Shown here piece after piece: positions 5,905 to 30,400 of a DNA stretch of 49,754 nucleotides. The notes under the pieces are model-generated. The model did no database searches and was not told where the DNA came from. It worked only from the letters and a program-made list of their open reading frames with translations. Positions within the stretch are counted from its first letter, which is position 1. Each line of letters starts with the position of its first letter. Location of the stretch: NCBI RefSeq assembly GCF_001194135.2, contig NC_069000.1:41114870-41164623 (forward strand), read 5' to 3'. The position numbers and the translations under genes were made by a program. Source of the DNA: Octopus bimaculoides. Its lineage: Eukaryota.

Positions 5905-7517
5905 ATACAAACACACTGATATCTATTTGTAGTATGTATGTATATATGTAAGTACGTACATACGTACGTACGTATTTATGTATGTAAGCATGTACGTATG
6001 TATAAAGAAATTACAAAATTTTCTCACTTACGAAAAGTCAGAGATGTCAAATATCGTTTAAAGGGTGATGCCTCACTGCCTGCACGTGGCTCATCAGCAT
6101 TGTTACAGTAACCACTGACATTATAACATGTTGGTAATGGACTACAAACTGGTGGAGGACAATGACTACAGAAAAATAGAGAAAAAATTAAATGGAAAGG
6201 TAAGCTAAATTTCCATCTTTGTGTATAATTTTTATATATTTATGATACATTCTTATTATTTTCAATATTTCTTTATGCAAGTATTTTCAGTATACAAATA
6301 ACAACTAAATAACTAAACTGTGCAAGCCTAAATGTGCAGTGTAGTTCTCAAAAATAATTTGTTAACGCGTGTATCTCTCAGTCAATAACTCACACACAAA
6401 CACAGACACACACGAACNNNNNNNNNNNNNNNNNNNNNNNNNNNNNNNNNNNNNNNNNNNNNNNNNNNNNNNNNNNNNNNNNNNNNNNNNNNNNNNNNNN
6501 NNNNNNNNNNNNNNNNNNNNNNNNNNNNNNNNNNNNNNNNNNNNNNNNNNNNNNNNNNNNNNNNNNNNNNNNNNNNNNNNNNNNNNNNNNNNNNNNNNNN
6601 NNNNNNNNNNNNNNNNNNNNNNNNNNNNNNNNNNNNNNNNNNNNNNNNNNNNNNNNNNNNNNNNNNNNNNNNNNNNNNNNNNNNNNNNNNNNNNNNNNNN
6701 NNNNNNNNNNNNNNNNNNNNNNNNNNNNNNNNNNNNNNNNNNNNNNNNNNNNNNNNNNNNNNNNNNNNNNNNNNNNNNNNNNNNNNNNNNNNNNNNNNNN
6801 NNNNNNNNNNNNNNNNNNNNNNNNNNNNNNNNNNNNNNNNNNNNNNNNNNNNNNNNNNNNNNNNNNNNNNNNNNNNNNNNNNNNNNNNNNNNNNNNNNNN
6901 NNNNNNNNNNNNNNNNNNNNNNNNNNNNNNNNNNNNNNNNNNNNNNNNNNNNNNNNNNNNNNNNNNNNNNNNNNNNNNNNNNNNNNNNNNNNNNNNNNNN
7001 NNNNNNNNNNNNNNNNNNNNNNNNNNNNNNNNNNNNNNNNNNNNNNNNNNNNNNNNNNNNNNNNNNNNNNNNNNNNNNNNNNNNNNNNNNNNNNNNNNNN
7101 NNNNNNNNNNNNNNNNNNNNNNNNNNNNNNNNNNNNNNNNNNNNNNNNNNNNNNNNNNNNNNNNNNNNNNNNNNNNNNNNNNNNNNNNNNNNNNNNNNNN
7201 NNNNNNNNNNNNNNNNNNNNNNNNNNNNNNNNNNNNNNNNNNNNNNNNNNNNNNNNNNNNNNNNNNNNNNNNNNNNNNNNNNNNNNNNNNNNNNNNNNNN
7301 NNNNNNNNNNNNNNNNNNNNNNNNNNNNNNNNNNNNNNNNNNNNNNNNNNNNNNNNNNNNNNNNNNNNNNNNNNNNNNNNNNNNNNNNNNNNNNNNNTAT
7401 CAATTCGGCATCATATAAACATTAGTTACAGAATAAAAATATCGATTAAAAAAACATTGTGAAATGCGAGCCAAATGTCTCTAAGACTGAAGTTTTAATT
7501 AATTGAAAAATATTTAC

Positions 7518-7564
7518 CTTGAAGAATGACAGCTAGAGCAGTCAATAGGAATGCAACAAACATC
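7518..7564 (-). CDS. Gene B exon 2, signal peptide (R)MFVAFLLTALAVILQ
   Basis: Inverted near-copy of 4250-4296 with one coding change (TTG to TTC, Leu to Phe) and donor gtaaat. Confidence 0.75.
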
Positions 7565-10565: not shown

Positions 10566-10596
<31 letters not shown>

Positions 10597-10952: not shown

Positions 10953-10957
10953 CTCAT
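10953..10957 (-). CDS. Gene B coding exon 1 (ATG AG)
   Basis: Reverse complement reads aaaaaagATGAG|gtaagtctgagc; inverted copy of 95-99; TATA-Inr promoter directly upstream. Confidence 0.75.
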
Positions 10958-12996: not shown

Positions 12997-13028
<32 letters not shown>

Positions 13029-13125
13029 CATGCACATATACATACATTCATGGATATATATATATATATATATATACACGTAAACGCACACACACACGCA
13101 CACACACACACACACACACACATAA

Positions 13126-13158
<33 letters not shown>

Positions 13159-13279
13159 CACACGCACACACAAGACAGAAGTAAATAGACACCCTTATGA
13201 TCGTTAAAATTTGTTTAAATCTGAAATTATACATTCAAATTATTTATTATTATAATGTGAATATCTAATATTTAGTAGA

Positions 13280-13850
13280 CACGCCCTTTGCATTTTTAAA
13301 TGTAAGGACCCTATTGGGCCTGCTACTGGTCACAGAGTCTTGATCAGAGAGTCTCCAAACTCACACCCGACCACTGTCGAAAAATAAAGTAAATCTGGAC
13401 TCATCAGTGAATATGAAAGTGTTCCAAAATGCTAGCAGCCTCTCCGCCTTCACACTGGCCCAATCTTTTCTCTGCTTAATATTTGGTCGAAGAAGTGGCT
13501 TCCTTCTTGCTGCTCTGTCATTGTAGCCAAGTCTGTGAAGATTCCTGGCAGCTGTACCGGGACTGATAACAACTTGTCCTGTTATGTCAGATGCCTTGCA
13601 ACGAGGATTATCCTCAATACTTCTTTTAACAAAGTGAAGGGTCTTGTCACAGGACTCTGGTCGATCTGGCCGAGCTGATGTGGAATCCTTCTCTCTCTGG
13701 TGAATTGCAGAATTACTCTATTAACTTTAGAAAGTAGGGTCCCTAGGTTTTCTGCGATTTTATGCTAAGTACACCTTCAGATAGACCCACAATATGGCCT
13801 CTTTGAAATTCGGACAGTTCTATGTCTTCTTTTGTACGTAGCATGATTAA
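13280..13850 (-). mobile_element. Tc1 transposase remnant (second family)
   Basis: ELSEFQRGHIVGL, GYNDRAARRKPLL and FIFTDESRFTLF. Confidence 0.85.
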
Positions 13851-13885
13851 ACAGTCACATATAGAACCTAAAACATAAAGATGTC

Positions 13886-14108
13886 GGGGAGAGTCATTCT
13901 CTTTTAGTGCCTTATAATTTAACACACTTACCGGTAAAATTTCCACTTATTTCTTTTTTATCTTTGTAAAACTTTCGTTGCATCTTGAAGCGTCTTGCAA
14001 AGCTTGCAAGATGAAATGAAAATTTTAGAAAAATAAAGAATAAATAAGTGGAAATTTTACCGGTGAATATGTTAAACTATAAGAAAATAAAAGAGAATGA
14101 CTCTCCCC
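13886..14108. repeat. Foldback/MITE-like palindrome; related copy at about 2890-3125
   Basis: ggggagagtcattctc...taccggtaaaatttccacttattt versus aaataagtggaaattttaccggt...gagaatgactctcccc. Confidence 0.7.
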
Positions 14109-14766
14109 AGATACAACAGAATATGCTTCAACACGCGAACTCACATAAAAAATCTTGCAAACCAAATCCAAAAACGAAATAANNNNNNNNNNGGGGGGGT
14201 GTTCTATTTACTTCTGTCGTGTGTGTGTGTGTATGTGTGTATGTGTGTGTATGTGTGTATGTGTGTGTATGTGTTTATGTATATCTGTGTGTGTGTGTGT
14301 GTGTGTGTGCATATAAACATGCATATATGCATGAACGCATAGATATATGCACAAACACATCAGGTAAAAGAAAATGCAAAGAGGATGCGTCGGAAAGACA
14401 TTATTTTGAAAAGCGGCAAAAAGTGCAAAATAATGTTGCCGTGAGAAGTGGAATCCCAACATTTTCGGCCGAAATCTTCAACAGGTTTGACATGATACAC
14501 GCGAAATAAAAGTAGAGAGAGTTTTAGATCCTTCCTGTTTAAACCATTGACTGCAAGTGATGTCGAAGGAAAACAACGTGAATAAGATCTGTTATTTCCA
14601 GTCTACCCACAGAAAGGAGAAAGAAACTAGGAAAGAAACAGGCGAAAGAAACAAGTGAGTATATGGGTAGGAAAGATTACCCTAAATCAAAAGAAGGAGA
14701 ACAGCGTGCAAGAATGAGGTGACGGGGAAAATTATTGAGAAGAAATCTAAATGATAAGGCAAGATT

Positions 14767-14804
<38 letters not shown>

Positions 14805-15129
14805 AGTAAAAATAAATACAAAAAAGGTGTTTTTTTTGTATGATTGTGTATAGAGGAATATATTATTTTGTTTAAAAGAGTTCCAACACTGTCTGTTTTT
14901 TATGTTTTATTTATATTCCTGCAGAACCAATGTGGGGTATAGAATATGGAATATACAATATATAATATAAAATAAAATAAAATAAAAATGGATGGCACCA
15001 TGAAAGAANNNNNNNNNNNNNNNNNNNNNNNNNNNNNNNNNNNNNNNNNNNNNNNNNNNNNNNNNNNNNNNNNNNNNNNNNNNNNNNNNNNNNNNNNNNN
15101 NNNNNNNNNNNNNNNNNNNNNNATATATA

Positions 15130-16260
15130 TATATATATATAGGTTATGAGACGTAATCGTGTTAATAAGACCCAAAGGTGTCAGGTAATGCTGAGTAAGT
15201 GCTATAGACAGACTATAGTTATATATATAGACAGGCATTATGATAGACTGGTATGAGTTGTGAGTGAAAGGATGAGAGAGGAGAGAGAGAAAAGAAAGAA
15301 ATGGAATAGGTGTGGGAAAGAATGAATAAGAGCGAAAGTAAAATAAAATCAAAAAATGAAAAGTAAAGATAAGGTGTCACTATTGTTCTTCGTAAGGGTC
15401 GATTAGGGGTGAGCGGTCAGACGTTAAGGTTTTGGTAAAGTGGAGGGGTAAGGTATTTATGTCCATTAATTAAATAAGTGAACTTTCGGTTCGGTGTAGT
15501 CAGAAAGAGAATTTAGTTCAATGGTTAATGGGGTTTTATAGTCTAGCCTAAGGAAGTATATATAAGATAAAATGCAATTAAATGGGTAAAGGATAAAAAT
15601 TAAAGAATAAAAATTGAACTTAAAAAGGTTATAGATTTAAAATAAAACTGAAAATTATAAATTAAAAGAAATTATTGCAGCTAGCTAGATACTTATGTTT
15701 ATAGAAAAGAAAAGAAAAATATGTACTATACTGTTGCGACCGTGGATACATATAGGCAAGTCTTATGTGTGTTGATTTCGCTTGCGTTTGGACCGACGGA
15801 AGAATCTAAAGGTGTGATAGAATTTATGCTTACATGTAGAGAACGCTTAGTGTTGTTTATGAGTAATTGTGGCGAATTATGAATTAATATTTTGAGGGCT
15901 TCTTTCAGGTAGAGTCCACGCGTGGAGTGCTTGCCTTGGTATAGGACTCCAGAATCGATTATGGCCTAGGATATCCTATAAGGTATTTTATTATTTATCA
16001 GACGGTGGATTTGCATTGCTCCTTATATTTAAATGAGTTTAAATGTACAGAATATCTCTGTTTAAAATCTATAGCAGACTCGATACATACTCACCTTGTC
16101 TCTGATGACGGTATACCCAGTGTAGGGACATATTAGCTTATCATTTGGGAAAGCTCAGAAACAGCTATAAAACTTCGAATTCATCTTACTCTTATTAAAT
16201 ATTCTAAATGACTTGACATTTCATGTCTGTTATGCAAACCATATGCTAGAAATATGTCTC
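15130..16260 (-). mobile_element. Penelope-like element 3' remnant (GIY-YIG endonuclease region)
   Basis: Degenerate SAIDFKQRYSVHLNSF and LYLKEALKIL GIY-YIG-like motifs; PLE-type terminal motifs nearby. Confidence 0.55.
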
Positions 16261-16486
16261 AGAGTACAAGGTCAACACACAAAGGAACAAGATTCCAAGG
16301 GGGTCTTGTTCCACATGAGACGACGTTTGCAACATTCCCAAAGTAGTGAAAGGTCCAACCTATAAACACATATATACATATATACACATATATACATATA
16401 CGCATATATAGATTTATATATATATATACACATATACATATATACTCATATATATACGTGTATATATACATGTATGTATGTGTGTA

Positions 16487-16525
<39 letters not shown>

Positions 16526-16627
16526 TAAGGTACTCAGAAATCTGGATGTTTATACATTTACAGATTTTTATTAATGTCACATATTAAATTAATGTCACAT
16601 ATTAAATAAAGCGCTTTTCACCTAATC

Positions 16628-16990
16628 GTGTATATATAAAAAGAATGAGATAAAGAGACCAATGTCATAAATAAATTTATATTTTATGTAGAATGTCTTA
16701 CAGCTGTTTCAAGGAAATTTCAATGTATCCCTTCATCGGAGACGGTAATAGTAGGAGATAAGGATTATTATTTCTGTATGATGAGATTTGCAGTAAGAAA
16801 TGAGAGCGATGAGGAGAAGAAGAAACAAAGAAGAAAAAGTACTTGGAGTACGGATTCTATATATGGATATTTACTTTTGGAATGGAACTATATATTGAAT
16901 TTTCTCTGAAACAGCTGAAAGACATTCTACATAAAATATAAATTTATTTATGCCATTGGTCTCTTTATCTCATTCTTTTTATATATACAC
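16628..16990. repeat. 95-bp inverted repeat (16628-16722 / 16896-16990), PLE-terminus-like
   Basis: Direct reverse-complement match with a few mismatches; overlaps a hammerhead-like motif. Confidence 0.8.
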
Positions 16991-17131
16991 ACGCTAATAC
17001 ACGACCCATGTTATATTCCCCATTCATGTTGCAACCACATCTGGGGCAAAAGTAGTCGGTATACAGCACTCACTCGGTATTACCTGTATCATTCGGGTAT
17101 GGTTGACTCCATTACCCTTCATAACCTTTAT

Positions 17132-17184
<53 letters not shown>

Positions 17185-17284
17185 GCATATATATACATAT
17201 ATATACATACGTATACATATATATATATGCATATATATACATATATGTATATATGTATATATATACATATATATGCATACATAC

Positions 17285-17368
17285 TAATTTTTGAAAATAG
17301 ATATATATACGGGAAGTTGCAACTTCCATGGCTTTCCAAATATGAACATTGGCATAAGTTATGTGAAA
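17285..17368 (-). CDS. Tentative gene C exon 6 ([28 protein letters not shown])
   Basis: atctcag| acceptor and gtatgt donor, 84 nt, phase 1-1, in frame; Cys pattern resembles the C..C...CFP segment that follows DHD in peroxidases; splice signals only moderate. Confidence 0.35.
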
Positions 17369-17460
17369 CTGAGATACACGAGATATTAAAATTTATTTAT
17401 TCTACTTTATACAACTGCATTGTGTGTCTGTATTTGTGTGTGTCTGAGAGAGAGAGAGAG

Positions 17461-17501
<41 letters not shown>

Positions 17502-17628
17502 TATATGTTTGTCTGCGTACAAAGAGTGTTAGAGCTTAAAAAAGAGAAGTAGAAAGAACGAGAGAAAAACAAATAGAAACACGAAATAGAAATAATTTCC
17601 AGAAAGAATATTATTTTGATTTACTTAC

Positions 17629-17808
17629 CTGTACTTCCTTTTTCAGTGAGAAACAAATCAAACATGAGGAGATTTCCAAAAATTGTAAAAAGATGAGTTG
17701 CATCTGATACCGTGGCATCTTGACAGGGGAACAAATCCATACTTACTTTTCTGGGAGGTGGGAGAACTTGACCGAACAAATTCTTATATGGAAGCGCACC
17801 AGTTCCAC
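17629..17808 (-). CDS. Gene C exon 5, animal heme peroxidase-like domain with degenerate distal pocket
   Basis: ttttccttag|...ACAG|gtaagt, 180 nt, phase 1-1, open: GGTGALPYKNLFGQVLPPPRKVSMDLFPCQDATVSDATHLFTIFGNLLMFDLFLTEKGST; matches the LPxxRxVS and WGQxxDHD regions of the family. Confidence 0.85.
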
Positions 17809-17899
17809 CTAAGGAAAAGAAGTATACGATAGTTACATTAAAATCAATATACTAGCAACTATATATGCTTTTCTGTTTATTCCAGTATATTTGTATGCG

Positions 17900-18215
17900 C
17901 GAACTTATTCTATGTGACAAAGTGGAGAGTAGTGGTTTTCTTTCACGACAATACATCTGCGCACACAGATAGTTTTTAACCAAAAATGGCAAGATCCCGC
18001 TTACCCACCCTCCTTATTCACCCGACCTTGCTCCCTGCGACTTGTTTTCCCCCTGAATGAAGAAAAGTCCTTCAAAGAAAACGTTTTGCAGATTTATACG
18101 AGTGGAAGAAAAAAAAACTACGGAGTTATTAAAAGGCATTACTTCGCAAGAGTTCTAGCACTGCTTCGATCAGTGGAAAATGCATCTGGACCGATGCATT
18201 GCTTCAAATGGAGAA
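17900..18215 (+). mobile_element. Mariner C-terminal remnant in gene C intron 4
   Basis: FFHDNTSAH..HPPYSPDLAPCDLF. Confidence 0.85.
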
Positions 18216-18277
18216 CAAACAAAAGTAAATGAATGAAATGATATTGCGTATGTTTGTATGTGTGCGTGCGTGTGTGT

Positions 18278-18308
<31 letters not shown>

Positions 18309-18533
18309 ATTTCTTTACTGCCCACAAGGGGCTACACACAGAGGGGACAAACAAGGACAAACAAACGGATTAAGTCGATTATATCGATCCCAGTGCGTAA
18401 CTGGTACTTATTTAATCGACCCCAAAATGATGAAAGGCACAGTCGACCTCGGCGGAATTTGAACTCAGAACGTAGCGGCAGACGAAATACCGCTAAGCAT
18501 TTCGCCCGGTGTGCTAACGTTTCTGCCAGCTCG

Positions 18534-18535
<2 letters not shown>

Positions 18536-18625
<90 letters not shown>
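18536..18625. repeat. (GT)n microsatellite, representative of dozens of (CA)n, (TA)n, (TATG)n, (GATA)n and (TAA)n tracts
   Basis: Directly visible; these tracts explain most low-complexity ORFs in the track. Confidence 0.95.
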
Positions 18626-18626
<1 letters not shown>

Positions 18627-18655
18627 GGAAAATTGCAAAGCATTCTCATACGTAC

Positions 18656-18846
18656 CTGTTGCCAGATATGTCATGTATCGACTCAAAGGTGAAGATGCAC
18701 TACCAGCGTATTTCGAAGCTACATTATTACATTGTCCGTCCGCTTGATAGTAGTTAATTGTCGGGCAATATGTATTATTACATTGTCCGTCCGCTTGATA
18801 GTAGTTAATTGTCGGGCAATATGTATTAGCGGTAAAAATGCAGCTA
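18656..18846 (-). CDS. Gene C exon 4, N-terminus of animal heme peroxidase domain
   Basis: Long polypyrimidine acceptor ...tttttcatctgcag| and donor ACAG|gtacgt; 191 nt, phase 2-1; SCIFTANTYCPTINYYQADGQCNNTYCPTINYYQADGQCNNVASKYAGSASSPLSRYMTYLAT matches YRTxDGxCNN...G....R. Confidence 0.88.
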
Positions 18847-19029
18847 CTGCAGATGAAAAATAGAGAAGAAAATAAAAGAAAAAGAAAAATATATTGCTAG
18901 GGTGGTTTGTATATCAAATTCATGTATTTATGACACATCCATATCATTTTTAGTTCGCACTCTCTCCACCAGCTTCATTTCCCATAGCCAGACTATTTCG
19001 TACTTAAGAGGGTTGTATCAATCGATCTT

Positions 19030-19450
19030 TCCGCCTTTCGTCTTGACTATTCGTGGGTGAGAGGGGCATGCAACATCAACTACATAGCATATCTGGTGCA
19101 CCATGTCCGCCACCACTAGGTTCTAGCACCTGATCTGTTTGGACTGTTAAATCCAAGAGGATTTTGCTTGTCTCCGACTCCGTCACTCTCTACGGTTTTC
19201 ATTCCACGTCCTGCTTCCCTCTAGCCCCCACTTTCCGCAATTTTCAATGTAGCCCTTTCGCTACCTGATCGTGTTGCCAGAAATTGTAGTGGTTTGAGAC
19301 AAGGCTAGGGCATTCGTTCGTGATATGGGCAATGGTTTCGTCAACTCTGTTAAAGATGCGGCACAGCGGAGACACTTGCTCATTCCTAAGGCTGACCTTC
19401 TAACTCTTGGCCAAAGCTTGGTCTTCGGCTGCATGTATAGTGCTCTCGGT
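19030..19450 (-). mobile_element. Older R4/Dong-like non-LTR remnant
   Basis: LCRIFNRVDETIAHITNECP..HDQVAKGLH..YVVDVACP (CCHC finger plus RLE region) with stop codons. Confidence 0.7.
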
Positions 19451-19460
19451 ATTATTATTA

Positions 19461-19519
<59 letters not shown>

Positions 19520-20815
19520 GCCTTTGCACAGCTTCTAACGCTGGAGATGTACTACAGTGAACTAAGGTAACACCTCTTATTTTTCGAGCACCTTCCGGAA
19601 TATTCGAGCGGTTCCAAGCAGTGCTGTTTTCTGCAAGTGCTCCACCCTTATTGCAGCCCCTATTTGTTCCACGTACTTCTTGAGATTTTTGCTCACTGTT
19701 CTCAGAGCTCCGACAATTATTGGTACTACTACCACCTTTTTCATCGACCATAACTGCTTAACTTCCCAAGCTAACCTGTCATATCTCTCGACTTTTCTTT
19801 CTTCCTTATCGCATACCTTGTTGTCAGCTGGGCATGCTATGTTTATGATCCAGCATAGCTTGTTTTCTTTCTCAATTAAGATTTTGTCTGGCTTCCTATT
19901 CTCTATCTCAAGGTCGCACTGAATCATAATATCCCATAAGATCTTTGCATTTCTATTTTCGACGATGCCTTCAGGTTTGTGGTCGTACCAATCTTTTGCT
20001 CTGTCAAGTCCATACTTGTTGCAAAGTGTCCAATGGACAAACCTGGCTATATTGTGGTAGCGTCTCTTATATTCCTTCTGGGCTAGTGGCCTACATTGGC
20101 TGGTAATATGCCATACAGTTTCACCATTTTGTCCACAGATTCTGCACTTATCACTTTCTGCTCTGTTGTCTATTCTGTATTTTATGTAGTTTATTCTTAG
20201 TGCTTGCACAGATTAGTTCTTAGCACAGATTAGATCCTCCGTTTCCGGTTTTAAATAACTTTTAGTCATCTACAGCCATCCTTTTTTCTCTGTCTCTCTT
20301 ATCTTCAACATCCCTATGAAATTGACCATGTATTCTTTTATTTACCCATCTATTTTCAGTTCCATTCGTTTTCAATTTCTTGTACAGTGCTTTATCTTTG
20401 CAATCTTTCATCCTACACAATACTGACCTTCTTACTTCTAATAGTAGCGGTTCTGCGGCATTTTTTACATACCATGCTATGATGTTTTCTTCTGCTCTAA
20501 TGCTGTGTTCGCATCCAATAAGTCCTCTTCTCCCTCTTTTTGTTGGAACATACAGACTGACTGTGTCACTTTTTGAGTAGATTGTCCCATATTTAGTTAG
20601 TAACTTCCTTGTCTTTCTGTCTAAGCTGTTTAGTTCGTCTACTGTCCATGCGATAACCCCTGTTCCATATCTAAGGAGTGAAACCGCCCAGATGTTGATA
20701 GCTTCGATCTTATTCCGTCCATTTAATTTCGATTTAAGGATTAGTCTCAGTCTATGCAAGTACTCCACTTTAAATTTTTCTGTCATTTCTTTTTCCATCA
20801 GTTTATCTATTTCCA
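19451..20815 (-). mobile_element. R4/Dong-clade non-LTR retrotransposon 3' part ending in a (TAA)n tract
   Basis: CRICGQNGETVWHITSQC, RKPDKIL..IINIACP and LQKTALLGTARIFRKVL; frameshift near 20230; (ATT)n at about 19451-19519. Confidence 0.9.
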
Positions 20816-21429
20816 TCGGCAAGCTAGCAGAATCGTTAGCAGATCAGGCAAAATATTTAGTGGTATTTCTTCCGGCTCTTTTATGTTCAAATTCCGCTGA
20901 GGTCAACTTAGCCTTCCATCTTTTCGCGGTTGATAAAATAAGTACCAGTTGAGGACAAGGGTCGATGTAATTGACTTAGCCTTTTCCCAGAAATTGTTAA
21001 CGTTGTTCCAAAATGTGAAGCTATTATTGTTGATGATGGCGCTGTTGTTGTTGCTGTTTTTAAGTACTTGGATCAATATTACAGACTTATCCCATCCTCT
21101 AAAATTGCTGGCCTTGTACCAAAATTTGAAACCATTATTATTATTTGCTGCCGACTCATTCAGAAATATGTTAGTCACACGTATACATGTATCCACACAC
21201 GCGCGCGCGCTCAATGACATTTACTAGGAGAGACCTGAAAGTGACAGTGACACTAGAACTGTTTGTTGATTTATTGCTAAGACCTCATCGACAAACTATA
21301 GAGACGGATGGTTTAAAAACTGGAAACAGCTTTCGGCATTACGTCTCTACTGTTTGATGCCTCCGGAAGCGTTAGCTAAAATATATGCAGAAGAGTCTTT
21401 GAATCCTTCCTCCGAATAATGTTGTTGTT

Positions 21430-21810
21430 GTTGGCACTCCGTCGCTCACGACGTCGATGGTTCCAGTTGATCCGATCAACGGAACAGCCTGCTCATAAAA
21501 TTAACGTGCAAGTGGCTGAGCACTCCACAGACACGTGTACCCTTAACGTAGTTCTCGCGGAGATTCAGCGTGACACAGTGTGACAAGGCTAACCCTTTGA
21601 ATTACAGGCACAACAGAAACAGGAAGAAAGAGTGAGAGAAAGTTGTGGTGAAAGAGTACAGCAGGGTTCGCCACCATCCCCTGCCGGAGCCTCGTGGAGC
21701 TTTAGGCGTTTTCGCTCAATAAACAATCACAACGCCCGGTCTAGGAATCGAAATCGCGATCCTATGACCGCGAGTCCGCTGCCCGAACCACTGGGCCATT
21801 GCGCCTCCAC
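21430..21810. mobile_element. Second SINE-like family (also about 5495-5825 and 43230-43500)
   Basis: Shared gttgatccgatcaacggaacagcctgctc..gtggctgagcactccacaga. Confidence 0.8.
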
Positions 21811-22580
21811 AACTCCGAATAATGTATACAAGTGACAAAAGACAAATATATATAATGTATTGGAATTACTGTCAGAAACCAAAATTACTCAATTCCTGAA
21901 GTTATCGCATCAGGAACGTATAAAGCAACAGTTATGTAATTGGGTAACTATATTTCAAAAAGTATTAAGAATTGAGTTGCCCCTAAAATATTTGAAAGAT
22001 ATCTTAATGCATTGAATGAGATAATTAGCCAAAGTATGAAGAAAAGCGTTCCAACAGTGGCAAAATAACCTTTTTAAGGAATTTAGTTACAAGGTCAGTC
22101 CTGATTAAGGAACCCTATTACTCCCGAGCATTCATCTTTTATTTTTGTTTCATTCAGGGGACGTAGTTGTTTTTTGACCTTCAATATCCATACAATATAA
22201 AGGCGGCTAGCTGGCAGAAACGTTAACACGCTGGGCAAAATGCTCAGCAGTATTTGGTCTGTCTTTACGTTCTGAGTTTAAATTCCGCCGAGGTCGACTT
22301 TGCCTTTCATCTTTTCGAGGGTTGATAAATTAAGTACCACTTGCATACTGGGGTCGATCTAATCGAATGTCCCCCTCCCCAAAATTTCGGGCCTTGTGCC
22401 TAGAGTAGAATACAATATAATATTGCCGTTATACAAACGTATAGCTGTGCGATAGCTATGGTTTAGTAAACTTATTGTATGTAAAATTATAACACTTCAT
22501 CAACTTAACGTTACATTTAGAACTCTTAAGAAAGCATGCAAAAGCATACATATGAATGTAGAAGTATTTGATCCATTTAC

Positions 22581-22596
22581 CTGCTTACAAGGCAAT
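22581..22596 (-). CDS. Gene C exon 3, 16-nt microexon (D)CLVS
   Basis: tcatttcgactggtattgcag|ATTGCCTTGTAAGCAG|gtaaat; homolog of 4835-4850; phases fit both neighbouring exons. Confidence 0.82.
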
Positions 22597-23403
22597 CTGC
22601 AATACCAGTCGAAATGAAGGAAAGGAAAAAGTACAAACATTATTATTTTTTTAATTGTTGATTAAAAAAAAACATTGGTTTTATAAAACGTAAAATTGTA
22701 TTATTCAATTATATTTTGAAAATATTAATTTAGATAAACACAGCATAATGAATTCTGCTGAAAAATATTCCATTGCAAATAGAAGAACCTTGGTCAATTT
22801 TCATTTCGATACATACAAATTCAATTAATTTCACTCGTATGTTACTACTCATTAAGGTGGCAAGCTGTCAACGTCGCTAGCACTACAGGCAAAATGATTA
22901 GCAATATTGCGTTTGTCTTTACGTTCAAATTCCAGCGAGACCGACTTTGTTCGATAAAATAAGTGCTAGTTGAACCCTGAGGCCGATGTAATCGACTTGC
23001 CCTCTCCCTCGAAATTGTTGTGCCAAAATTTGACACCAATATACTGCTCATTAGTCCATTTCTTTCTTTTCTCTTCCTCTCACTTTTATCCTCCTCTTTC
23101 TCTCTCTCTCTCTTTCTTTCTTTCTTTCGCGCGCTCTTTGATGAAAAAAAAAGACCTTCCTCACTTCTTAAGCATTGTGGGTCGAAAACATTATTATGTC
23201 TCCTACTCTTAAGAACATAGACTGTGGTTTGAGGGTGATTTGCTAAGTACTGAAAATATGCAAGTGGTAAGATTTTTCATTTTTTTCCCCTTCACTCGTT
23301 AGTTCAAAGATCTATAGCTTGGGCCATATGTCCCCTGTAATTACACAATAAAAATGTAGATCAAACAAATGACTGAAGTTTTAATGAATGAAATATTATT
23401 TAC

Positions 23404-23450
23404 CTTGAAGAATGACAGCTATGCCAGTCAATAACAATGCAACAAGCAAC
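23404..23450 (-). CDS. Gene C exon 2, signal peptide (R)LLVALLLTGIAVILQ
   Basis: ttttccctag|GTTGCTT...CTTCAAG|gtaaat, 47 nt; homolog of gene A/B exon 2. Confidence 0.85.
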
Positions 23451-23749
23451 CTAGGGAAAATGGAAAGAAAATGAGAACGGAATGTTATCAGAAATGTAAT
23501 TTAAAGATATTGTATCATACAGATTCGCACACATGCGACTTATACATGATCAAGTATCTCTTGTTTCCCGAAAGCTCGTATCAAACGAGTCTTGGAGTAG
23601 TGACTAAGTGAATCTTGATAATGAAGAGTGAAATGAAGGGTCTGTTACATGGAAATTGCAGGTCGATTGCGTGCTTGAATTTACAATGGAAGTTGTTGAC
23701 ATACATCTTTACTGCAATAGTATATGTTTACATGCTTCAAATGCTTCGA

Positions 23750-25080
23750 AATCAAGCAAAAGGGATGTAGAAAGGTTCTACATCTTTGCTATTGAAAAGA
23801 CGATCGCGAATGGCTGAAAATAAACGCCCAAAGAATTTATGAATTGCTTGGATAGACTTTACGAAAGCCTTTGACATGGTCCTACATTCGTGAAATATTT
23901 GTGAATGCTTGGAATGGTCGATTGCGTTATTAAAGAAATCGCATCTAGCATGCTCCTGTGGAAGACAAAACTGTATGTAAGAAATAAACACCTAGGTGCG
24001 GCAGATATAAGAAGAGTAATTTTCGAAGATGATTCATATTTGCTATTGTTCTTTGTAATCCTGTTACTATTTCCGATGATCTTGCGGGAGACAGGTATTG
24101 GCTATAAGATTGAAAACAGAGTGACTAAGATCGATCGTTTACTTTTCACGGATCATCTAGAGCTCTTTGGCAAGGATGAATTACAGATTGGTCCACTGAT
24201 CAGAACTGTTTACTGGTGCTGTAAAGAAATTGGGATGAAGTTTGGTATTGCAAAGTGCACTACCCTAACTATGGAAGAGATGGAGGCGTATGTATGGTAG
24301 TGAGAAAGAGTTACTTGATGGCGAGTCAATTGGTCACCGTCAGAATAAAGGGTACAAATATCTGGGAATTTTGGAACTGGACAAAGTACTAAGTGAGAAG
24401 ATGAAAAGTAATATGAAAGAATTCTATTCAAACAATTTAGAGTTGCTACTAAAAACTAAATTGAATTGGAAGAACTCGATTACTACAACGAAAAACTGAG
24501 CCGTGCGGGTTATTAGAAATAGTGCGGATATTTTGAATTGGACCAAAACACATACAGTTGGATAGGTTAACGCCAAAGAAAATAGTTGACAATAGCGCAT
24601 TGCACCCAAGAACGTAGAAGAACGATTTTTGAAAGATTGTGTGACTAGGAAATACTGGTCAGTAGATTTGTATTTGGCCAATAGTAGACAAGGACTCTTA
24701 AGGTGTGTTACCAAAAGCAAAGTTATGTACATTGACATTATTGAAAGTAAATAAAATTACAAACAGAGGTTGCTAGCTGAGAAACTGAGCAGAAAGGAGG
24801 GTCTGGAATAACACGGTCAATTCGAAAGACAAACAAAAGAAGTAAAAGCAGAATCTTCATGGAAGCTAAAAGGTGATAGTAAGATAGAGACAAGAAGTTT
24901 GTAGCTGTTCAGGATCAAGCACTAAGCACAAATCGTTGAAGAATATGCATAACCCAGATGAAGCAAATACATGTAGGTTATGTGAGAAACAGCTGGAAAG
25001 TGATACACATCATGAGTACGTGTGATGTGCTTACGCAGAAAGAATAAAATTAGGCTGATACAGACGTAAGAGAGAAGTTA
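23750..25080 (+). mobile_element. Degenerate R4/Dong-like RT remnant in gene C intron 1
   Basis: KAFDMVLHS, IRRVIFEDDS (IRRGIFQGDS), LLFTDHLELF (YMDDLKL) and IGMKFGIAKC. Confidence 0.85.
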
Positions 25081-25718
25081 TCAAATCTAAGTAGAACACA
25101 AGGTATTATATGGGTTAAAGTGACCGAGAATAAACAACGCACCAATTTCAAAATAGATCTGTTGAATACAACCTAAATTATACGCAAAACATTTTAAGTT
25201 TAAGAATACGACTAACTCAACACATTTTTGTATAATTCAACAACTACGAAACACGTTATCACCTAACAAAGCAACTTAATTTACATAGCAAGAAAGAAAA
25301 GCTAAAATAACACCAACAAACGCAAAACTATTCCCCGCTACTAATCAAAACAAAAATAAACATAAAAAATACTCTCTGAAAATGCAAACAACGTTGCTCA
25401 GTCATCTTTAGGAACTGCACCGGCGTTTGCACTTTCTGAAGTGAAATCGCATAAATGTGTTGTTATGTTAATGTTAATAATAATAGTTTTTACCATAGGC
25501 ATAATGTCATATTTTAGCGAACCAGAAAAGATTAAAGGTAAAGATGGCTTTGGTTGGGATTTCAAAACAAAAGGTATAAGATGCTACGAAATACAGCTTG
25601 AGGCTATATGTGATCATTTTGTGAGTAGAACTTCGCAGATAGAATCTTTTCAAAAACCTGTCGTCTATGTCGATATTTTCACAAACACACACACACACAT
25701 TATATGTGTGTGTGTGTG

Positions 25719-25752
<34 letters not shown>

Positions 25753-26890
25753 TGTATGTATGTATGTATGTATGTATGTATAAACAAACGAATGGATTAT
25801 ACTGTATCGTTACAATCACTTTCTTAAGATATTCTATTGAATAGAAAGATTACTAGATGTCAAAATGACCGATCACATTCTCGAAGAGAGGATCGCACAT
25901 GGCCTCATTTCTATGGCGAAAGCCAATAAAAGAGTTAACGATTAAAAACAGTAACGCAAGACCATTTTATAAAGGCATATATCAAGTACAACATTTATAA
26001 GGGTATCTTTCAAATTATCAGGCTGCACCATGTTGCATAAGAGCAAATATTGACGTGCTGCAGCTCAACGTTGCACTTCGTTCATATCTGTCTGCAATAA
26101 AATCTTTTAATGAAACGATTGTAGCGATACAGTATAATCCATTCGTTTCTTTTTATTGTTATTTCACAGCACTCTGAGTTGTCTTCTACTTTGGATACTC
26201 ATGGAACTGCAGATTACCAAACATCAGTGGACTTCCGTACATCGATGCTCGATGCTTCTTTCATAAACTGAGCTGTTTACCTGTTGGTTTGTGCTTTACC
26301 GTACAGTCAGTAATATTGTGTGGTTCACTTTGATACACTCCGATCTTAATTGATCCTCTTTATGTGTGCGTATGTGTGAAGGCGTGTGGCCCAGTTGTTA
26401 GGAGTGTTGCTCTCACGATCGCGTTGTGTTCTTGAGCAAAGTACTTCATTTCACGTTGCTCCAGTCCATTCAGCTGTAAATGGATACCCCTACGACGAAA
26501 TAGCCTTCCGATCAGGGGTAATGCTGGGCTGCTCACCCAGCCAGCGAGGTGATGTCATTCGAAAGCTAAAATGATGCGAAGTGGCCAGCGATGTATAACA
26601 GCGTCCGACAGTCTAATAAACCGTGCTGTATGTATATGCATTCATGCATACAGGTTTACATACATACGTTTTTGAGTTTGTGTATTTTTATCCGTGCCTA
26701 CGGTTTTGTTCACCCTGGTCTAGAAATGATTACCGGTCAGAAAGATTACTAGATGTCAAAATGACCAATAACATTCTCGAAGACAGGATCGCATATGTCC
26801 TCATTTCTATGACGAAAGCCAATAAAAGAGTTAAAGATTAAAAACAGTAACACAAGACCATTTTATAAAGTTTTACCGCAAAAAACTTAC

Positions 26891-26895
26891 CTCAT
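26891..26895 (-). CDS. Gene C coding exon 1 (ATG AG)
   Basis: ctcaaagaaaataaaaagaaaaATGAG|gtaagt; 5' UTR and intron 1 resemble gene A/B; exons 1-5 total 439 nt in one open frame (146 codons + 1 nt). Confidence 0.8.
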
Positions 26896-27013: not shown

Positions 27014-27067
27014 AGTAAGACTGCAAAATCTCCCGATATTTATACAAAAAGGGCTACACAAAAGTGT
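27014..27067 (-). promoter_or_regulatory. Gene C core promoter: ACACTTTTGT element, TATAAATA, initiator-like TTACT
   Basis: Minus strand acacttttgt (27067-27058), TATAAATA (27044-27037), 18-nt spacer, TTACT (27018-27014). Confidence 0.6.
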
Positions 27068-28112: not shown

Positions 28113-30400
28113 CTAGCAGTAGTACCTGGCGTTGCACAGGTCTTAATAAATTACGATTCAACTGCGAAAAGAAGAGGCTTTGCACTTGAGAAAATGTTTT
28201 GAGCCCTACCTCGGCTACCGTGTTTGCGCAATGCTCTTCTGATTTCAACATCTTACTCCTCAGCCCAGCGCAGATAAGAACCATACACTTGCGAATGAAG
28301 CCATAGAAGGAAGCACACAGATAAACGTATAGGAAGAGAACGAGTTGAACAATTTCAGCGTTTCCTAAGAGCGAACCATTTGAGCGATAGATTGCTCCCG
28401 GTTGAAGGAGGTTAATGGTTAATGGGTGACAGTTGGAATGTCACCCTCAAGAGGTTCATGCAACACGTAGCCGCCATACGTTTTGTAAATTGGTATCATT
28501 TCCGTTGAATTGGTCACTTTAATGTTGTGAATAAACATACTTGAGGTAATCGACCGCATAGAAGGCAGCAGAAATGTTCTCAAATATGCGATACCTAACC
28601 TGCCTTTCCGCTGGTCTGTTTGTAGCAGCTGTTTGACAACACCGTTTCTTCGCTTTATTATCGTGCAAATGCAACGAATCACCACCTCTTTGCCATCGTA
28701 GGAACTCCACACGAACGCCTTCCATAAACCCACAGAATATCAAGATGCAGGCGCCCTTTTCTGATGCTTCCGCCTGAAACGGGGTACGCTCAAATAGTAA
28801 AAGTATTTGAGCGTATCCGGTTATATGCATGGATAGCGATAACGTACCCACTTCAGCCTTGGCAAATACGTAACACTTCGTTGTAGACAATGTTTCTCGT
28901 CTTCCCCCGACGTGTTTATGCGAACAGTCTGTCTTTACTGCCGACTCTGGAGCATGCAACTTACAGCTGGCCATGCGAAAATCAAGGCTCTTCCAAGTCC
29001 GGCCACAGAAAGAATCTGGCCCTAGGACTTGTTGAGAGACATGGCGAAGCTGGGCCGGTGTGGGAATTGCAGTCTTCTGAAGGCGAAAGGTATGCGTCTG
29101 CTCCCGAGGGAGTAAGGGGAATCCTGTGACTGAATATATCCTCACCTTTTCCGCATCCGGATAGGATGGCTGCCTCGACAACATGCTTCATTTTTTTTTT
29201 ACAGCCAGACGTGTTCCGTTGCACAGTCTGGGGGGAGGGTGCTCCAAAGTGCGTCGACGCATNNNNNNNNNNNNNNNNNNNNNNNNNNNNNNNNNNNNNN
29301 NNNNNNNNNNNNNNNNNNNNNNNNNNNNNNNNNNNNNNNNNNNNNNNNNNNNNNNNNNNNNNNNNNNNNNNNNNNNNNNNNNNNNNNNNNNNNNNNNNNN
29401 NNNNNNNNNNNNNNNNNNNNNNNNNNNNNNNNNNNNNNNNNNNNNNNNNNNNNNNNNNNNNNNNNNNNNNNNNNNNNNNNNNNNNNNNNNNNNNNNNNNN
29501 NNNNNNNNNNNNNNNNNNNNNNNNNNNNNNNNNNNNNNNNNNNNNNNNNNNNNNNNNNNNNNNNNNNNNNNNNNNNNNNNNNNNNNNNNNNNNNNNNNNN
29601 NNNNNNNNNNNNNNNNNNNNNNNNNNNNNNNNNNNNNNNNNNNNNNNNNNNNNNNNNNNNNNNNNNNNNNNNNNNNNNNNNNNNNNNNNNNNNNNNNNNN
29701 NNNNNNNNNNNNNNNNNNNNNNNNNNNNNNNNNNNNNNNNNNNNNNNNNNNNNNNNNNNNNNNNNNNNNNNNNNNNNNNNNNNNNNNNNNNNNNNNNNNN
29801 NNNNNNNNNNNNNNNNNNAAAGTCACCTAAAAGCAAAGGCGTAACATCTCTCACGGGGGCTTCGCAACCCTTGATATCCTGAAGGGTTCTGTTTAACGTG
29901 TCGAAGGCTCCCCTGTGGGCCATAGTACACTTGTCCAACACAATAAGCTGACAGCGTTTCAGCACTTGGCCCTGGTCAGAGTTCTTGGTTATATTGCAGG
30001 TAAGTGTTTCTGACTTAGTTAAATTGAGGGGCAACTTAAAGGTGGAGTGGGCAGTTCTGCCGCCAGGCAGCAAAGTTGTAGCAATCCTTGAAGATGCGAC
30101 CTCAACCGCAATGCTCTTTTGCGTCTTGACCTTCGATAGGATGAGCTTCGTTAGAAAGACTTTGCCTGTACCCACTGGAGCATCAAGATAAACAAACCCA
30201 CTTTCCTGTGGTGCACATGATCAGTCACAATAGTATAAACATGCCGTTGATCCGGAAGAAGCTTGGGTTCAGTTTCTAGGACGAAATCGGCAAGGGCATC
30301 TGTGTCGTAGGACGTCTCTCGCAAAAGAGCTGTAGGAAGTAAATTTGACTCTGAACGCAGAAGAGAAGAGAAATTGTCCATATCTCTCTTGACAGGTTAG
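28113..30400 (-). mobile_element. Helitron 3' portion (PIF1-like helicase pseudogene plus 3' terminus)
   Basis: GTGKVF, LLPGGRTAHSTFKLPL, LLGDF and LCNGTRL; 3' hairpin acctg..caggt (28124-28141) then CTAG at 28113-28116 followed by T. Confidence 0.92.

What the first reader, a model, noticed from the sequence alone, without database searches (positions are those of the whole stretch)
17629..26895. Secreted pseudo-peroxidase: animal heme peroxidase fold with the distal catalytic residues replaced
Seen: five GT-AG exons splice into one open frame: MRLLVALLLTGIAVILQDCLVSSSCIF..YYQADGQCNNVASKYAGSASSPLSRY..GALPY..VLPPPRKVS..THLFTIFGNLLMFDLFLT. Established: in myeloperoxidase the aligned motif WGQLLDHD holds Gln91, Asp94 (heme ester link), His95 (distal catalytic His) and Asp96 (Ca ligand). 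Here Q is N, D is M and H is F, while the Ca-binding Asp is kept. A-to-I editing cannot restore His from TTT or Gln from AAT. Inference: the intact frame, splice sites and TATA promoter suggest a functional secreted non-catalytic protein (structural, adhesive, pigment-binding or gland secretion), analogous to enzyme recruitment as cephalopod crystallins. It could define a lineage-specific pseudo-enzyme family.
Basis: partly seen in the sequence, partly recalled or inferred. Interest (0 to 1): 0.85.

Follow-up and report, generated by a model that had tools for sequence, protein, structure and literature searches.

The report
Truncated octopus heme-less peroxidase gene
The five exons are real and belong to an octopus-specific family of secreted peroxidase look-alikes that have lost every heme-binding residue, but this copy holds only the first sixth of the protein and splices out of frame into the next gene, so it is most likely a gene remnant.

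Summary
On the minus strand, five GT-AG exons (26891-26895, 23404-23450, 22581-22596, 18656-18846, 17629-17808) give the 146-aa frame. It matches Pfam An_peroxidase (E 2.7e-11), and Gln/Asp/His of the distal motif are Asn/Met/Phe.

The organism is Octopus bimaculoides (LOC106874155). The match covers only profile positions 1-88 of 530. The O. sinensis ortholog (638 aa, 14 coding exons) has the same first five exon lengths, but orthology stops about 340 bp after exon 5. Exons 6-14 are nowhere in the window.

RNA contigs from three runs join exon 5 to exon 2 of a paralog 10 kb downstream. The join is out of frame and stops after 7 codons (153 aa). NCBI's model ends instead in a Tc1-transposon-derived exon. 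Expression is about 0-6 reads, against 570-960 for the neighbour. Substitutions look neutral.

So this locus is most likely a truncated 5' remnant, not a working pseudo-peroxidase.

Full-length relatives in O. sinensis, O. vulgaris, O. bimaculoides and Argonauta lack Gln, both heme-ester residues, distal His, distal Arg and proximal His, yet keep the fold, the Ca loop and a signal peptide.

The parts
27037..27044 (-). TATAAATA box about 145 nt upstream of the ATG
   Evidence: Conserved in position in gene 1, the O. sinensis ortholog and the downstream paralog (alignment). No transcription start site was mapped.
26891..26895 (-). Coding part of exon 1 (ATGAG, donor gtaagt)
   Evidence: Identical ATGAG|gtaagt in O. 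sinensis. The paralog's equivalent junction is seen in 478-830 raw reads. No direct RNA evidence for this copy.
23404..23450 (-). Exon 2, signal peptide (RLLVALLLTGIAVILQ)
   Evidence: Present in NCBI model P0001. One raw read lies exactly on the exon. 97.8% identical over 45 nt in O. sinensis.
22581..22596 (-). Exon 3, 16-nt micro-exon
   Evidence: Identical in O. sinensis, with the same splice sites.
18656..18846 (-). Exon 4 (start of the An_peroxidase match, YYQADGQCNN...)
   Evidence: RNA contigs and reads join it to exon 5. It is 140 nt in O. sinensis and O. vulgaris.
18723..18828 (-). Perfect 51-bp in-frame tandem duplication (2.1 copies; TYCPTINYYQADGQCNN twice)
   Evidence: TRF reports 100% matches. 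The copy junction is present in an independent O. bimaculoides DNA run and in RNA. Two related species 'skip 51', and it is absent in O. sinensis and O. vulgaris.
17629..17808 (-). Exon 5, last exon with peroxidase homology; ends in phase 1
   Evidence: RNA contigs cover exactly 17628-17810.
17657..17680 (-). Degenerate distal-site motif FGNLLMFD (canonical W/F-G-Q-x-x-D-H-D)
   Evidence: Unchanged in three related species.
17135..17290 (.). End of orthology with the O. sinensis gene, at a (TA/TATG)n microsatellite in intron 5
   Evidence: Colinear alignment runs from window 29140 to 17286 and then stops. Micro-exon 6 and exons 7-14 are not found.
13743..13867 (-). Alternative terminal exon of NCBI model XP_014777265.1, derived from a Tc1/mariner transposase HTH (…SEFQRGHIVG…, stop 13743-13745)
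   Evidence: No RNA evidence was obtained here.
10953..10957 (-). ATGAG first coding exon of the downstream paralog ('gene 2'), which has its own TATA promoter
   Evidence: 84-86% of raw reads on exon 2' come from it (478 of 570, 830 of 962, 577 of 680).
7518..7564 (-). Exon 2' of gene 2, the acceptor used by gene-1 exon 5. The fused frame stops at TGA 7542-7544
   Evidence: The loose end of the exon-5 contigs equals window 7534-7563. Contigs of three runs carry exon 5 -> 2' -> 3' -> 4'. Frame computed.
6032..6165 (-). Exon 4' of gene 2 (…CYNVSGYCNNADEPRAGSEASPFKRYL…)

Best explanation
The region is the 5' remnant (promoter plus coding exons 1-5) of the O. bimaculoides ortholog of an O. sinensis 14-exon gene. 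That gene encodes a 638-aa secreted, heme-less peroxidase-fold protein, one member of a tandemly arrayed, fast-evolving octopod family.

In O. bimaculoides the gene body from intron 5 onward is missing. The likely cause is a deletion or unequal exchange within the tandem cluster, with a breakpoint at a microsatellite (inferred).

The promoter and splice sites still work at a low level. With no exon 6 available, exon 5 is spliced to the next good acceptor on the same strand. That acceptor is exon 2 of the next family member 10 kb downstream, or, in NCBI's model, a Tc1-derived exon. The phases do not match (phase 1 onto phase 2), so the frame stops after 7 codons (153 aa), or after 41 codons (187 aa) in the Tc1 exon. 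Many exon junctions lie downstream of the stop, so the transcript should be a target for nonsense-mediated decay (inferred).

The replaced catalytic residues are therefore not decay of this copy. They are the ancestral state of the whole family and were inherited by the fragment.

Shown: exon structure, homology, loss of colinearity, the RNA junction, the premature stop, low read counts.
Inferred: the deletion mechanism, nonsense-mediated decay, lack of function.
For: - Identity: the only database match is XP_014777265.1 of O. bimaculoides. The closest full-length relatives are octopod 'peroxidase mlt-7-like / chorion peroxidase-like' proteins.
- Orthology: the window and the O. sinensis locus are colinear over about 12 kb. 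Exon lengths are identical (5/47/16/140/180), with 86% nucleotide and 77.5% amino-acid identity.
- Truncation: colinearity ends at window ~17286. There is no An_peroxidase signal in the three minus-strand frames of 10958-17628. There is no hit to P0056 residues 130-638, to the other family proteins tested, or to the exon 6-14 DNA anywhere in the window. O. vulgaris keeps all 14 exons.
- RNA: contigs from runs dated 2015 and 2020 join exon 5 to window 7534-7563, and one runs 2.2 kb further into gene 2. The junction is out of frame, with the stop at 7542-7544.
- Expression: 0, 6 and 0 reads on exon 5 in three raw-read runs, against 570, 962 and 680 on gene 2's exon 2'. A contig made only of gene-1 sequence has depth 7.7.
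- Relaxed constraint: a perfect 51-bp duplication adding two cysteines is specific to this species. About 14-15 nonsynonymous against 4 synonymous changes separate it from three close species. Omega against O. sinensis is 0.85.
- Family state: the octopod clade lacks all six heme and catalytic residues but spans the whole Pfam profile and models as an LPO/MPO fold.
Against: - The assembly is short-read, with 20 N gaps in the window. The loss of colinearity falls at a microsatellite, a typical place for a contig misjoin. The neighbouring 11 kb contains an inverted near-identical copy that looks like an assembly artefact.
- I could not search the rest of the O. bimaculoides genome for exons 6-14.
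- The exon 5 -> exon 2' junction is known only from assembled contigs, not from raw reads. Contigs show presence, not proportions.
- The frame of exons 1-5 is intact in four species, with no frameshift. That is mildly unexpected for old neutral sequence: about 4 indels would be expected in 388 nt at the non-coding rate over the full divergence from O. sinensis. P(no stop) is 0.33 for 27 random substitutions.
- dN/dS near 1 is not diagnostic, because the intact O. sinensis / O. vulgaris orthologs differ by 19 nonsynonymous and 1 synonymous change.
Confidence: 0.68

Rival explanations
1. One reading: this locus encodes a complete, functional, secreted non-catalytic peroxidase-fold protein. Its exons 6-14 exist in the animal but are missing or misplaced in this gapped short-read assembly.
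For: - The ortholog is complete in O. sinensis and O. vulgaris.
- Promoter, splice sites and frame of exons 1-5 are intact in four species.
- The break in colinearity lies at a microsatellite, and the window has many gaps and a suspicious inverted duplicate.
- Other O. bimaculoides family members are annotated only as 5'- or 3'-less pieces, so the cluster is poorly assembled.
Against: - In three RNA runs the contig leaves exon 5 straight into exon 2' of the paralog without a branch. That would not happen if an exon 5 -> exon 6 junction were comparably abundant.
- 2.5 kb of gap-free sequence downstream of exon 5 lacks the micro-exon that sits 1.9 kb downstream in O. sinensis.
- The total N between exon 5 and gene 2 is under 1 kb, against more than 20 kb needed.
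- The annotated O. bimaculoides paralogs are only 50-60% identical to the ortholog's 3' part.
- Expression is very low.
Confidence: 0.12
2. The fragment is a working gene in its own right. It would make a 153-aa (or 187-aa) secreted mini-protein made of the signal peptide plus the N-terminal module. From my own knowledge, that module corresponds roughly to the myeloperoxidase light chain.
For: - The open frame, signal-peptide-like N-terminus and splice sites are kept in four species.
- It is transcribed and correctly spliced at exon 4-5.
- No frameshift has occurred, although about 4 indels would be expected at the neutral rate over the full divergence from O. sinensis.
Against: - This segment is an integral part of a 530-position domain, and nothing suggests it folds alone.
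- The recent 51-bp duplication adds two cysteines to a conserved Cys-containing motif.
- Nonsynonymous changes occur at about the neutral proportion.
- The stop codon lies far upstream of many exon junctions, so nonsense-mediated decay is expected.
- Read counts are 0-6.
- Keeping the frame is not very improbable by chance (P about 0.3 for stops).
Confidence: 0.08
3. The five exons act as an alternative, tissue-specific 5' leader and promoter of gene 2. The upstream transcription start adds a long overlapping upstream ORF that silences or tunes translation of gene 2, whose ATG lies 20 nt before the upstream ORF's stop.
For: - The chimeric exon 5 -> 2' -> 3' -> 4' RNA recurs in three runs from two studies.
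- Gene 2 has an in-frame ATG at the start of exon 2'.
- In the runs with raw reads, gene 2 uses its own exon 1' in about 85% of reads. A few unlisted minor forms remain.
Against: - The arrangement is absent in O. sinensis: no gene-2-like sequence lies within 10 kb downstream of the ortholog. It is therefore recent and need not be adaptive.
- Reinitiation after a 153-codon ORF is inefficient (general knowledge).
- Abundance is very low.
Confidence: 0.1

Closest known systems
O. sinensis 'peroxidase mlt-7-like' (P0056, 638 aa, CM016876.1:7.94-7.98 Mb) and its O. vulgaris counterpart (P0059)
   Same: It is the ortholog: colinear flanks and introns, the same five exon lengths and splice sites, 77.5% amino-acid identity. 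The degenerate motif is of the same kind (FGRLLKFD against FGNLLMFD), and the signal peptide and TATA box match.
   Different: The O. sinensis and O. vulgaris genes run on through 9 more coding exons to a full An_peroxidase domain plus a Cys-rich tail. The window copy stops after exon 5 and carries an extra 51-bp duplication.
Other octopod heme-less peroxidase-like proteins: O. vulgaris CAI9737355.1 (P0002), O. bimaculoides 'peroxidase mlt-7' (P0055, P0060), O. sinensis 'chorion peroxidase-like' (P0058), Argonauta hians GAB1602081.1 (P0003)
   Same: They are paralogs, 46-58% identical. All show FG-x-LL-[KM]-[FA]-D, distal Arg replaced by Ile or Leu, the Glu-ester residue lost and the proximal His lost. 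The Ca loop T-H-V-I-D-A-S is kept.
   Different: They are full-length, or are annotated pieces of full-length genes. None is the missing 3' half of this gene.
Human peroxidasin-like protein (PXDNL), and the peroxidase-homology domain of mammalian dual oxidases
   Same: These are members of the same superfamily that keep the fold but have lost catalytic residues and peroxidase activity. PMC8533639 states this for PXDNL and shows that mutating the motif Gln and Asp abolishes peroxidasin activity. DUOX1 appears among sequence and fold matches of the ortholog. That the mammalian DUOX domain lacks the heme histidines is from my own knowledge.
   Different: They are single conserved vertebrate genes or domains inside multidomain proteins. 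They are not a tandemly expanding, fast-evolving family of stand-alone secreted proteins. No specific relationship to the octopod clade is implied.
Catalytic cephalopod heme peroxidases (Euprymna light-organ halide peroxidase cluster; Sepia ink-gland peroxidase)
   Same: Same superfamily, also in lineage-specific tandem clusters with high gene gain and loss (PMC6386654; PMC10142993).
   Different: Those are reported as active enzymes. The clade here lacks the residues needed to bind heme. O. sinensis P0006 keeps distal His, Arg, Glu and proximal His, and looks like an intermediate.

Membership tests
Animal heme peroxidase domain (Pfam PF03098, peroxidase-cyclooxygenase superfamily) | Significant match to the family profile | tested here: met
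   E 2.7e-11, 43.2 bits against a 25-bit cut-off, residues 55-143. Exhaustive HMMER finds 46 relatives, all of those examined being peroxidase-domain proteins.
Animal heme peroxidase domain (Pfam PF03098, peroxidase-cyclooxygenase superfamily) | A complete domain (about 530 profile positions) | tested here: not met
   Only profile positions 1-88 are encoded. There are no further exons in the window. RNA leaves exon 5 for another gene's exon, out of frame.
Animal heme peroxidase domain (Pfam PF03098, peroxidase-cyclooxygenase superfamily) | Distal Gln, heme-ester Asp and distal His in the motif G-Q-x-x-D-H-D | tested here: not met
   Asn, Met and Phe stand at these columns, and the Ca-ligand Asp is kept. 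The codons are confirmed in independent DNA and RNA.
Animal heme peroxidase domain (Pfam PF03098, peroxidase-cyclooxygenase superfamily) | Distal Arg, Glu ester and proximal His | tested here: not met
   The exons that would carry them are absent from this locus. In the ortholog and paralogs they are Ile/Leu, Asn or a gap, and Met/Leu/Val/Gly.
Animal heme peroxidase domain (Pfam PF03098, peroxidase-cyclooxygenase superfamily) | Heme binding and peroxidase activity | not testable with these tools
   This needs recombinant protein, Soret absorbance and activity assays.
Octopod heme-less peroxidase-like clade (P0056, P0002, P0055, P0058, P0003) | Closest relatives by sequence, with orthologous position in a sister genome | tested here: met
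   52% identity to P0002 and P0003, E 2e-25 and 7e-24. Colinear with the O. sinensis P0056 locus.
Octopod heme-less peroxidase-like clade (P0056, P0002, P0055, P0058, P0003) | Clade motif F-G-x-L-L-[KM]-[FA]-D after T-H-L-F | tested here: met
   THLFTIFGNLLMFD.
Octopod heme-less peroxidase-like clade (P0056, P0002, P0055, P0058, P0003) | Full-length architecture: signal peptide, whole peroxidase fold, Cys-rich C-terminal tail | tested here: not met
   Only the signal peptide and N-terminal module are present. The ortholog has all parts.
Truncated gene remnant / transcribed pseudogene | Loss of a large part of the coding exons relative to the ortholog | tested here: met
   Exons 6-14 are absent from the window, and colinearity ends at ~17286. 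Caveat: this is a gapped short-read assembly, and the rest of the genome was not searchable.
Truncated gene remnant / transcribed pseudogene | Transcripts carry a premature stop | tested here: met
   Exon 5 -> exon 2' gives a TGA after 7 codons. NCBI's alternative end stops inside a Tc1-derived exon.
Truncated gene remnant / transcribed pseudogene | Neutral substitution pattern | tested here: inconclusive
   Omega is 0.85 against O. sinensis, and about 14-15 nonsynonymous against 4 synonymous changes separate it from close species. The intact O. sinensis / O. vulgaris pair shows 19 nonsynonymous against 1 synonymous, so the test does not discriminate. No stop or frameshift is present in exons 1-5.

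The most novel reading that the evidence does not exclude
Octopods carry a tandem family of secreted proteins that keep the animal heme-peroxidase fold and its calcium site but have lost all heme-binding and catalytic residues. They change at the protein level at or above the neutral rate, and would have been recruited to a non-enzymatic role such as a structural, adhesive, ligand-binding or reproductive/defensive secretion. In that picture, the window holds two members: the highly expressed 'gene 2' and this recently truncated copy. The truncated copy's N-terminal module would still be made as a 153-aa secreted peptide, or would serve as a switchable leader of gene 2. The family part alone I put at about 0.6. 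The probability given here is for the full reading, including a function for the truncated copy.
Probability: 0.12. Interest if true: 0.55.

Novelty: new member of a known kind. Interest (0 to 1): 0.3.

Why it matters
For genome annotation, LOC106874155 should not be read as a peroxidase or as a complete pseudo-enzyme. It is a 5' fragment whose annotated 3' end is transposon-derived and whose real transcripts run into the next gene.

For biology, the useful result is one level up. A clade restricted so far to octopods (Octopus and Argonauta) consists of full-length, secreted, heme-less peroxidase-fold proteins. It sits in tandem clusters with rapid gene turnover, and at least one member is strongly expressed.

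My paper searches found no description of it. The proteins are labelled only 'peroxidase mlt-7-like' or 'chorion peroxidase-like'. It would be a clean case of an enzyme fold recruited to a non-enzymatic secreted role in cephalopods, next to known inactive relatives such as PXDNL.

It also warns that functional inference and counts of 'peroxidases' in cephalopod genomes are inflated by non-catalytic and fragmentary members.

Tried and rejected
I used short stretches instead.
- phmmer of the 146 aa against PDB sequences found nothing at E<=1. Only the Pfam profile and the ortholog gave alignments.
This was later repeated with real family members, with the same result.
- The word-indexed protein search with gene 2's N-terminus found no relative. 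Gene 2's 3' part and its catalytic motif therefore remain unknown.
- P0001 is not on record for the look-up of encoding contigs.
- A-to-I editing or sequencing error at the motif was considered and rejected: no alternative bases in DNA or RNA.
- P0055 or P0060 as the displaced 3' half of this gene was rejected. They are only 50-60% identical to the ortholog, and P0055 has its own exon 5.
- The contig 'depth 360' as a sign of high expression was rejected. It is a mean over a contig that includes gene 2 exons; the gene-1-only contig has depth 7.7, and raw reads number 0-6.
- dN/dS near 1 as proof of a pseudogene was rejected, because the intact orthologs behave the same way.
- Read laying is exhausted, so the exon 5 -> exon 2' junction could not be counted in raw reads. 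The minor loose ends were not listed.

Full report
**1. The observation**

The gene is on the minus strand. Pfam An_peroxidase matches residues 55-143 at E 2.7e-11, but only to profile positions 1-88 of 530.

The motif FGNLLMFD (17657-17680) sits on the canonical G-Q-x-x-D-H-D column set in a family alignment. The near-identical ortholog aligns residue for residue with lactoperoxidase 'wgqivdhd'. Gln, the heme-ester Asp and the distal His are Asn, Met and Phe, and the Ca-ligand Asp is kept.

An independent DNA run and two RNA runs show no alternative base in exon 5.

**2. Whose gene it is**

The only word-indexed database hit is XP_014777265.1, 'uncharacterized protein LOC106874155' of Octopus bimaculoides. 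That 215-aa model uses two far-upstream exons (46591-46644, 44540-44574) instead of the ATGAG exon. It ends in an exon at 13743-13867, which is a fragment of a Tc1/mariner transposase HTH. The window is a gapped short-read assembly with 20 N runs and is full of transposon remnants.

**3. There is no rest of the gene here**

- A Pfam scan of all three minus-strand frames between exon 5 and the next gene (10958-17628) finds only Tc1/Tc3 HTH domains.
- tblastn with the closest full-length relatives and with the ortholog finds only exons 2, 4 and 5 plus pieces of a paralog.
- The exhaustive HMMER search and the follow-up search identified the O. sinensis protein P0056 (638 aa) as the ortholog.
- Its locus (L003) is colinear with the window from 29140 down to 17286. 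The first five exon lengths (5/47/16/140/180) and splice sites are identical, with 86% nucleotide and 77.5% amino-acid identity.
- The O. sinensis gene has 14 coding exons, including a 25-nt micro-exon 1.9 kb after exon 5. O. vulgaris has all 14 intact.
- In the window, colinearity stops about 340 bp after exon 5, at a (TA/TATG)n microsatellite.
- Neither the micro-exon nor exons 7-14 occur anywhere in the window.
- The 2.2 kb of gap-free sequence after the break matches nothing in the O. sinensis, O. vulgaris or two other O. bimaculoides loci.

**4. What the RNA does**

Exon 5 is covered exactly (17628-17810) by contigs of a 2015 run and a 2020 run. Upstream these contigs continue into exon 4. 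Downstream they continue into TAGAGCAGTCAATAGGAATGCAACAAACAT. That sequence is window 7534-7563.

This is exon 2' of a paralog ('gene 2') with its own ATGAG exon (10953-10957), a conserved TATA box and signal peptide, and an exon 4' at 6032-6165. Three runs carry exon 5 -> 2' -> 3' -> 4', and one contig continues 2.2 kb into gene 2.

The junction ...ACAG|GATGTTTG... is out of frame. The ORF reads ...TEKGSTGCLLHSY and stops at TGA 7542-7544, giving 153 aa.

Read counts in three raw-read runs (about 12 million reads sampled from each):

| Run | Reads on gene 2 exon 2' | Of these, from gene 2's own exon 1' | Reads on gene 1 exon 5 |
|---|---|---|---|
| X11 | 570 | 478 | 0 |
| X12 | 962 | 830 | 6 |
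| X13 | 680 | 577 | 0 |

. The 6 reads in X12 all cross the exon 4-5 junction. Exon 2 of gene 1 got one read.

The contig 'depth 360' is a mean dominated by the gene 2 part. The contig made only of gene 1 sequence has depth 7.7 (this reading of the depth is my inference).

**5. Evolutionary signals**

- Contigs of three closely related species keep the frame and the FGNLLMFD motif. They lack the 51-bp duplication, which is nevertheless real in an independent O. bimaculoides DNA run and in RNA.
- The listed differences amount to about 14-15 nonsynonymous and 4 synonymous changes.
- Against O. sinensis, dN is 0.145, dS is 0.171 and omega is 0.85.
- This looks neutral, but the test is not decisive. 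The intact O. sinensis and O. vulgaris orthologs differ by 19 nonsynonymous and 1 synonymous change in 1917 nt, at about the intron rate.
- Keeping the frame is only mildly informative. P(no stop) is 0.33 after 27 random substitutions. The non-coding indel rate of 0.0106 per nt predicts about 4 indels in 388 nt over the full two-lineage divergence.
- Together these suggest the truncation is not ancient.

**6. The family**

The closest relatives are:
- O. vulgaris CAI9737355.1 and CAI9737356.1
- O. sinensis XP_036366834.1, P0056 and P0058
- O. bimaculoides P0055 and P0060
- Argonauta hians GAB1602081.1

They are labelled 'peroxidase mlt-7-like', 'chorion peroxidase-like' or 'peroxidase-like protein'. 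The full-length ones cover An_peroxidase positions 3-530.

In the alignment, this octopod clade has:
- F-G-[RTKN]-L-L-[KM]-[FA]-D at the distal site;
- Ile or Leu for the distal Arg;
- no Glu ester;
- Met, Leu, Val or Gly for the proximal His;
- a changed R-D-H-G motif;
- an intact calcium loop T-H-V-I-D-A-S.

O. sinensis P0006 still has the distal His, Arg, Glu and proximal His, and looks like an intermediate. An AlphaFold model of P0056 (mean pLDDT 67.6, pTM 0.64) finds lactoperoxidase and myeloperoxidase as best PDB matches (E about 1e-18, TM about 0.6).

The replaced residues are the family's ancestral state, not decay of this copy. My paper searches found no description of it. Tandem, fast-turnover peroxidase clusters are known in cephalopods (PMC6386654). 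Inactive superfamily members are also known, for example PXDNL (PMC8533639).

**7. Interpretation**

The best reading (confidence 0.68) is a truncated 5' remnant of one family member. Its promoter and splice sites still fire weakly. Lacking exon 6, its exon 5 is spliced to the next acceptor available on the same strand, which gives a premature stop and probably nonsense-mediated decay.

The deletion mechanism, the decay and the lack of function are inferences.

The main caveat is assembly quality. The break is at a microsatellite. The adjacent 11 kb holds an inverted 95-100% identical copy of gene 2's 5' part. The other annotated family members in this species are all partial. I could not search the rest of the genome.

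Rivals:
- A complete gene hidden by misassembly (0.12).
- A functional 153-aa secreted mini-protein (0.08).
- An alternative regulatory leader of gene 2 (0.10).

**8. Verdict**

Interest is modest (0.3). The locus itself is an ordinary gene remnant, while the undescribed heme-less octopod clade and its highly expressed member next door are the lead worth following.

Noticed in passing
window 1-4416 versus 7398-11051: An inverted, 95-100% identical copy of gene 2's promoter and exons 1-3 faces the first copy, so the two 5' halves converge on each other. This looks like a mis-scaffolded haplotig or a very recent palindromic duplication. The single difference in exon 2' (7549 G against C, as at 4266) appears in 15-24% of RNA reads, so both versions are expressed.
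   Followed up: partly
window 18723-18828: A perfect 51-bp in-frame tandem duplication in exon 4 adds TYCPTINYYQADGQCNN, including two extra cysteines. It is present in independent O. bimaculoides DNA and RNA. It is absent in two sister species, O. sinensis and O. vulgaris.
   Followed up: yes
L003 (O. sinensis) versus L004 (O. vulgaris), the 14 coding exons of the ortholog: The two intact orthologs differ at 20 of 1917 coding positions: 19 nonsynonymous and 1 synonymous. The one-sided binomial P is about 0.05 against the neutral 3.6:1 expectation, and exon divergence is about equal to intron divergence. This suggests positive selection or very weak constraint across the family.
   Followed up: partly
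window 12300-13900, minus strand: There are two decayed Tc1/mariner copies (HTH_Tnp_Tc3_2, E 5.6e-14 and 4e-4). The last coding exon of NCBI model XP_014777265.1 (13743-13867) is made from one of them.
   Followed up: yes
L001 (O. bimaculoides CM046620.1:41.08-41.11 Mb), 1-6640 minus strand and 10001-24798 plus strand: Two peroxidase-like 3' halves, both starting at the 'NPLVMALYHVFLREHN' exon, lie head to head 3.4 kb apart with no 5' exons. P0055 also lacks exons 1-4. The whole cluster seems fragmented in this assembly and its annotation.
   Followed up: no
window 6032-6165, 7518-7564, 10953-10957 (gene 2): Gene 2 is strongly expressed in three 2026 RNA runs (570-962 reads on a 47-nt exon in about 12 million reads). 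Its N-terminus has no annotated relative in any database searched. Its 3' part and its catalytic motif could not be recovered.
   Followed up: partly
window 804-969, 3762-3932, 3999-4157, 7657-7815, 7882-8055, 18309-18536, 20817-20985, 22200-22366, 35010-35176, 42774-42902: A roughly 170-230-bp SINE-like repeat occurs at least ten times in the window and more than fifteen times in the O. sinensis locus, including tandem runs at L003 47100-48560.
   Followed up: no
window 28982-30175 (-), 1040-1516 (-), about 49410-49655 (+), 19577-20822 (-): Other mobile-element remnants are present: a PIF1-like helicase fragment (Helitron-like, E 6e-29), a mariner Transposase_1 fragment (E 4e-17), an RNase H / RVT_3 fragment, and two long ORFs in intron 3 with no Pfam match.
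   Followed up: partly
P0056 residues about 520-638, and the same region of P0055, P0058, P0060 and P0003: After the peroxidase domain, the family carries a conserved Cys-rich tail (C-S-x-I-x-E-I-D-F-C … W-[ST] … C-P-C-x-G-x-P-F … C-P) followed by helices. The model has pLDDT about 75-88 there. It resembles a thrombospondin-type repeat by eye, but Pfam found no domain.
   Followed up: no
window 7563, run X11: Seven reads on exon 2' continue into exon 4' sequence in the opposite orientation (loose end GTTATAATGTCAGTGGTTACTGTAACAATG). This could be a strand-switch artefact or reflect the inverted twin copy.
   Followed up: no
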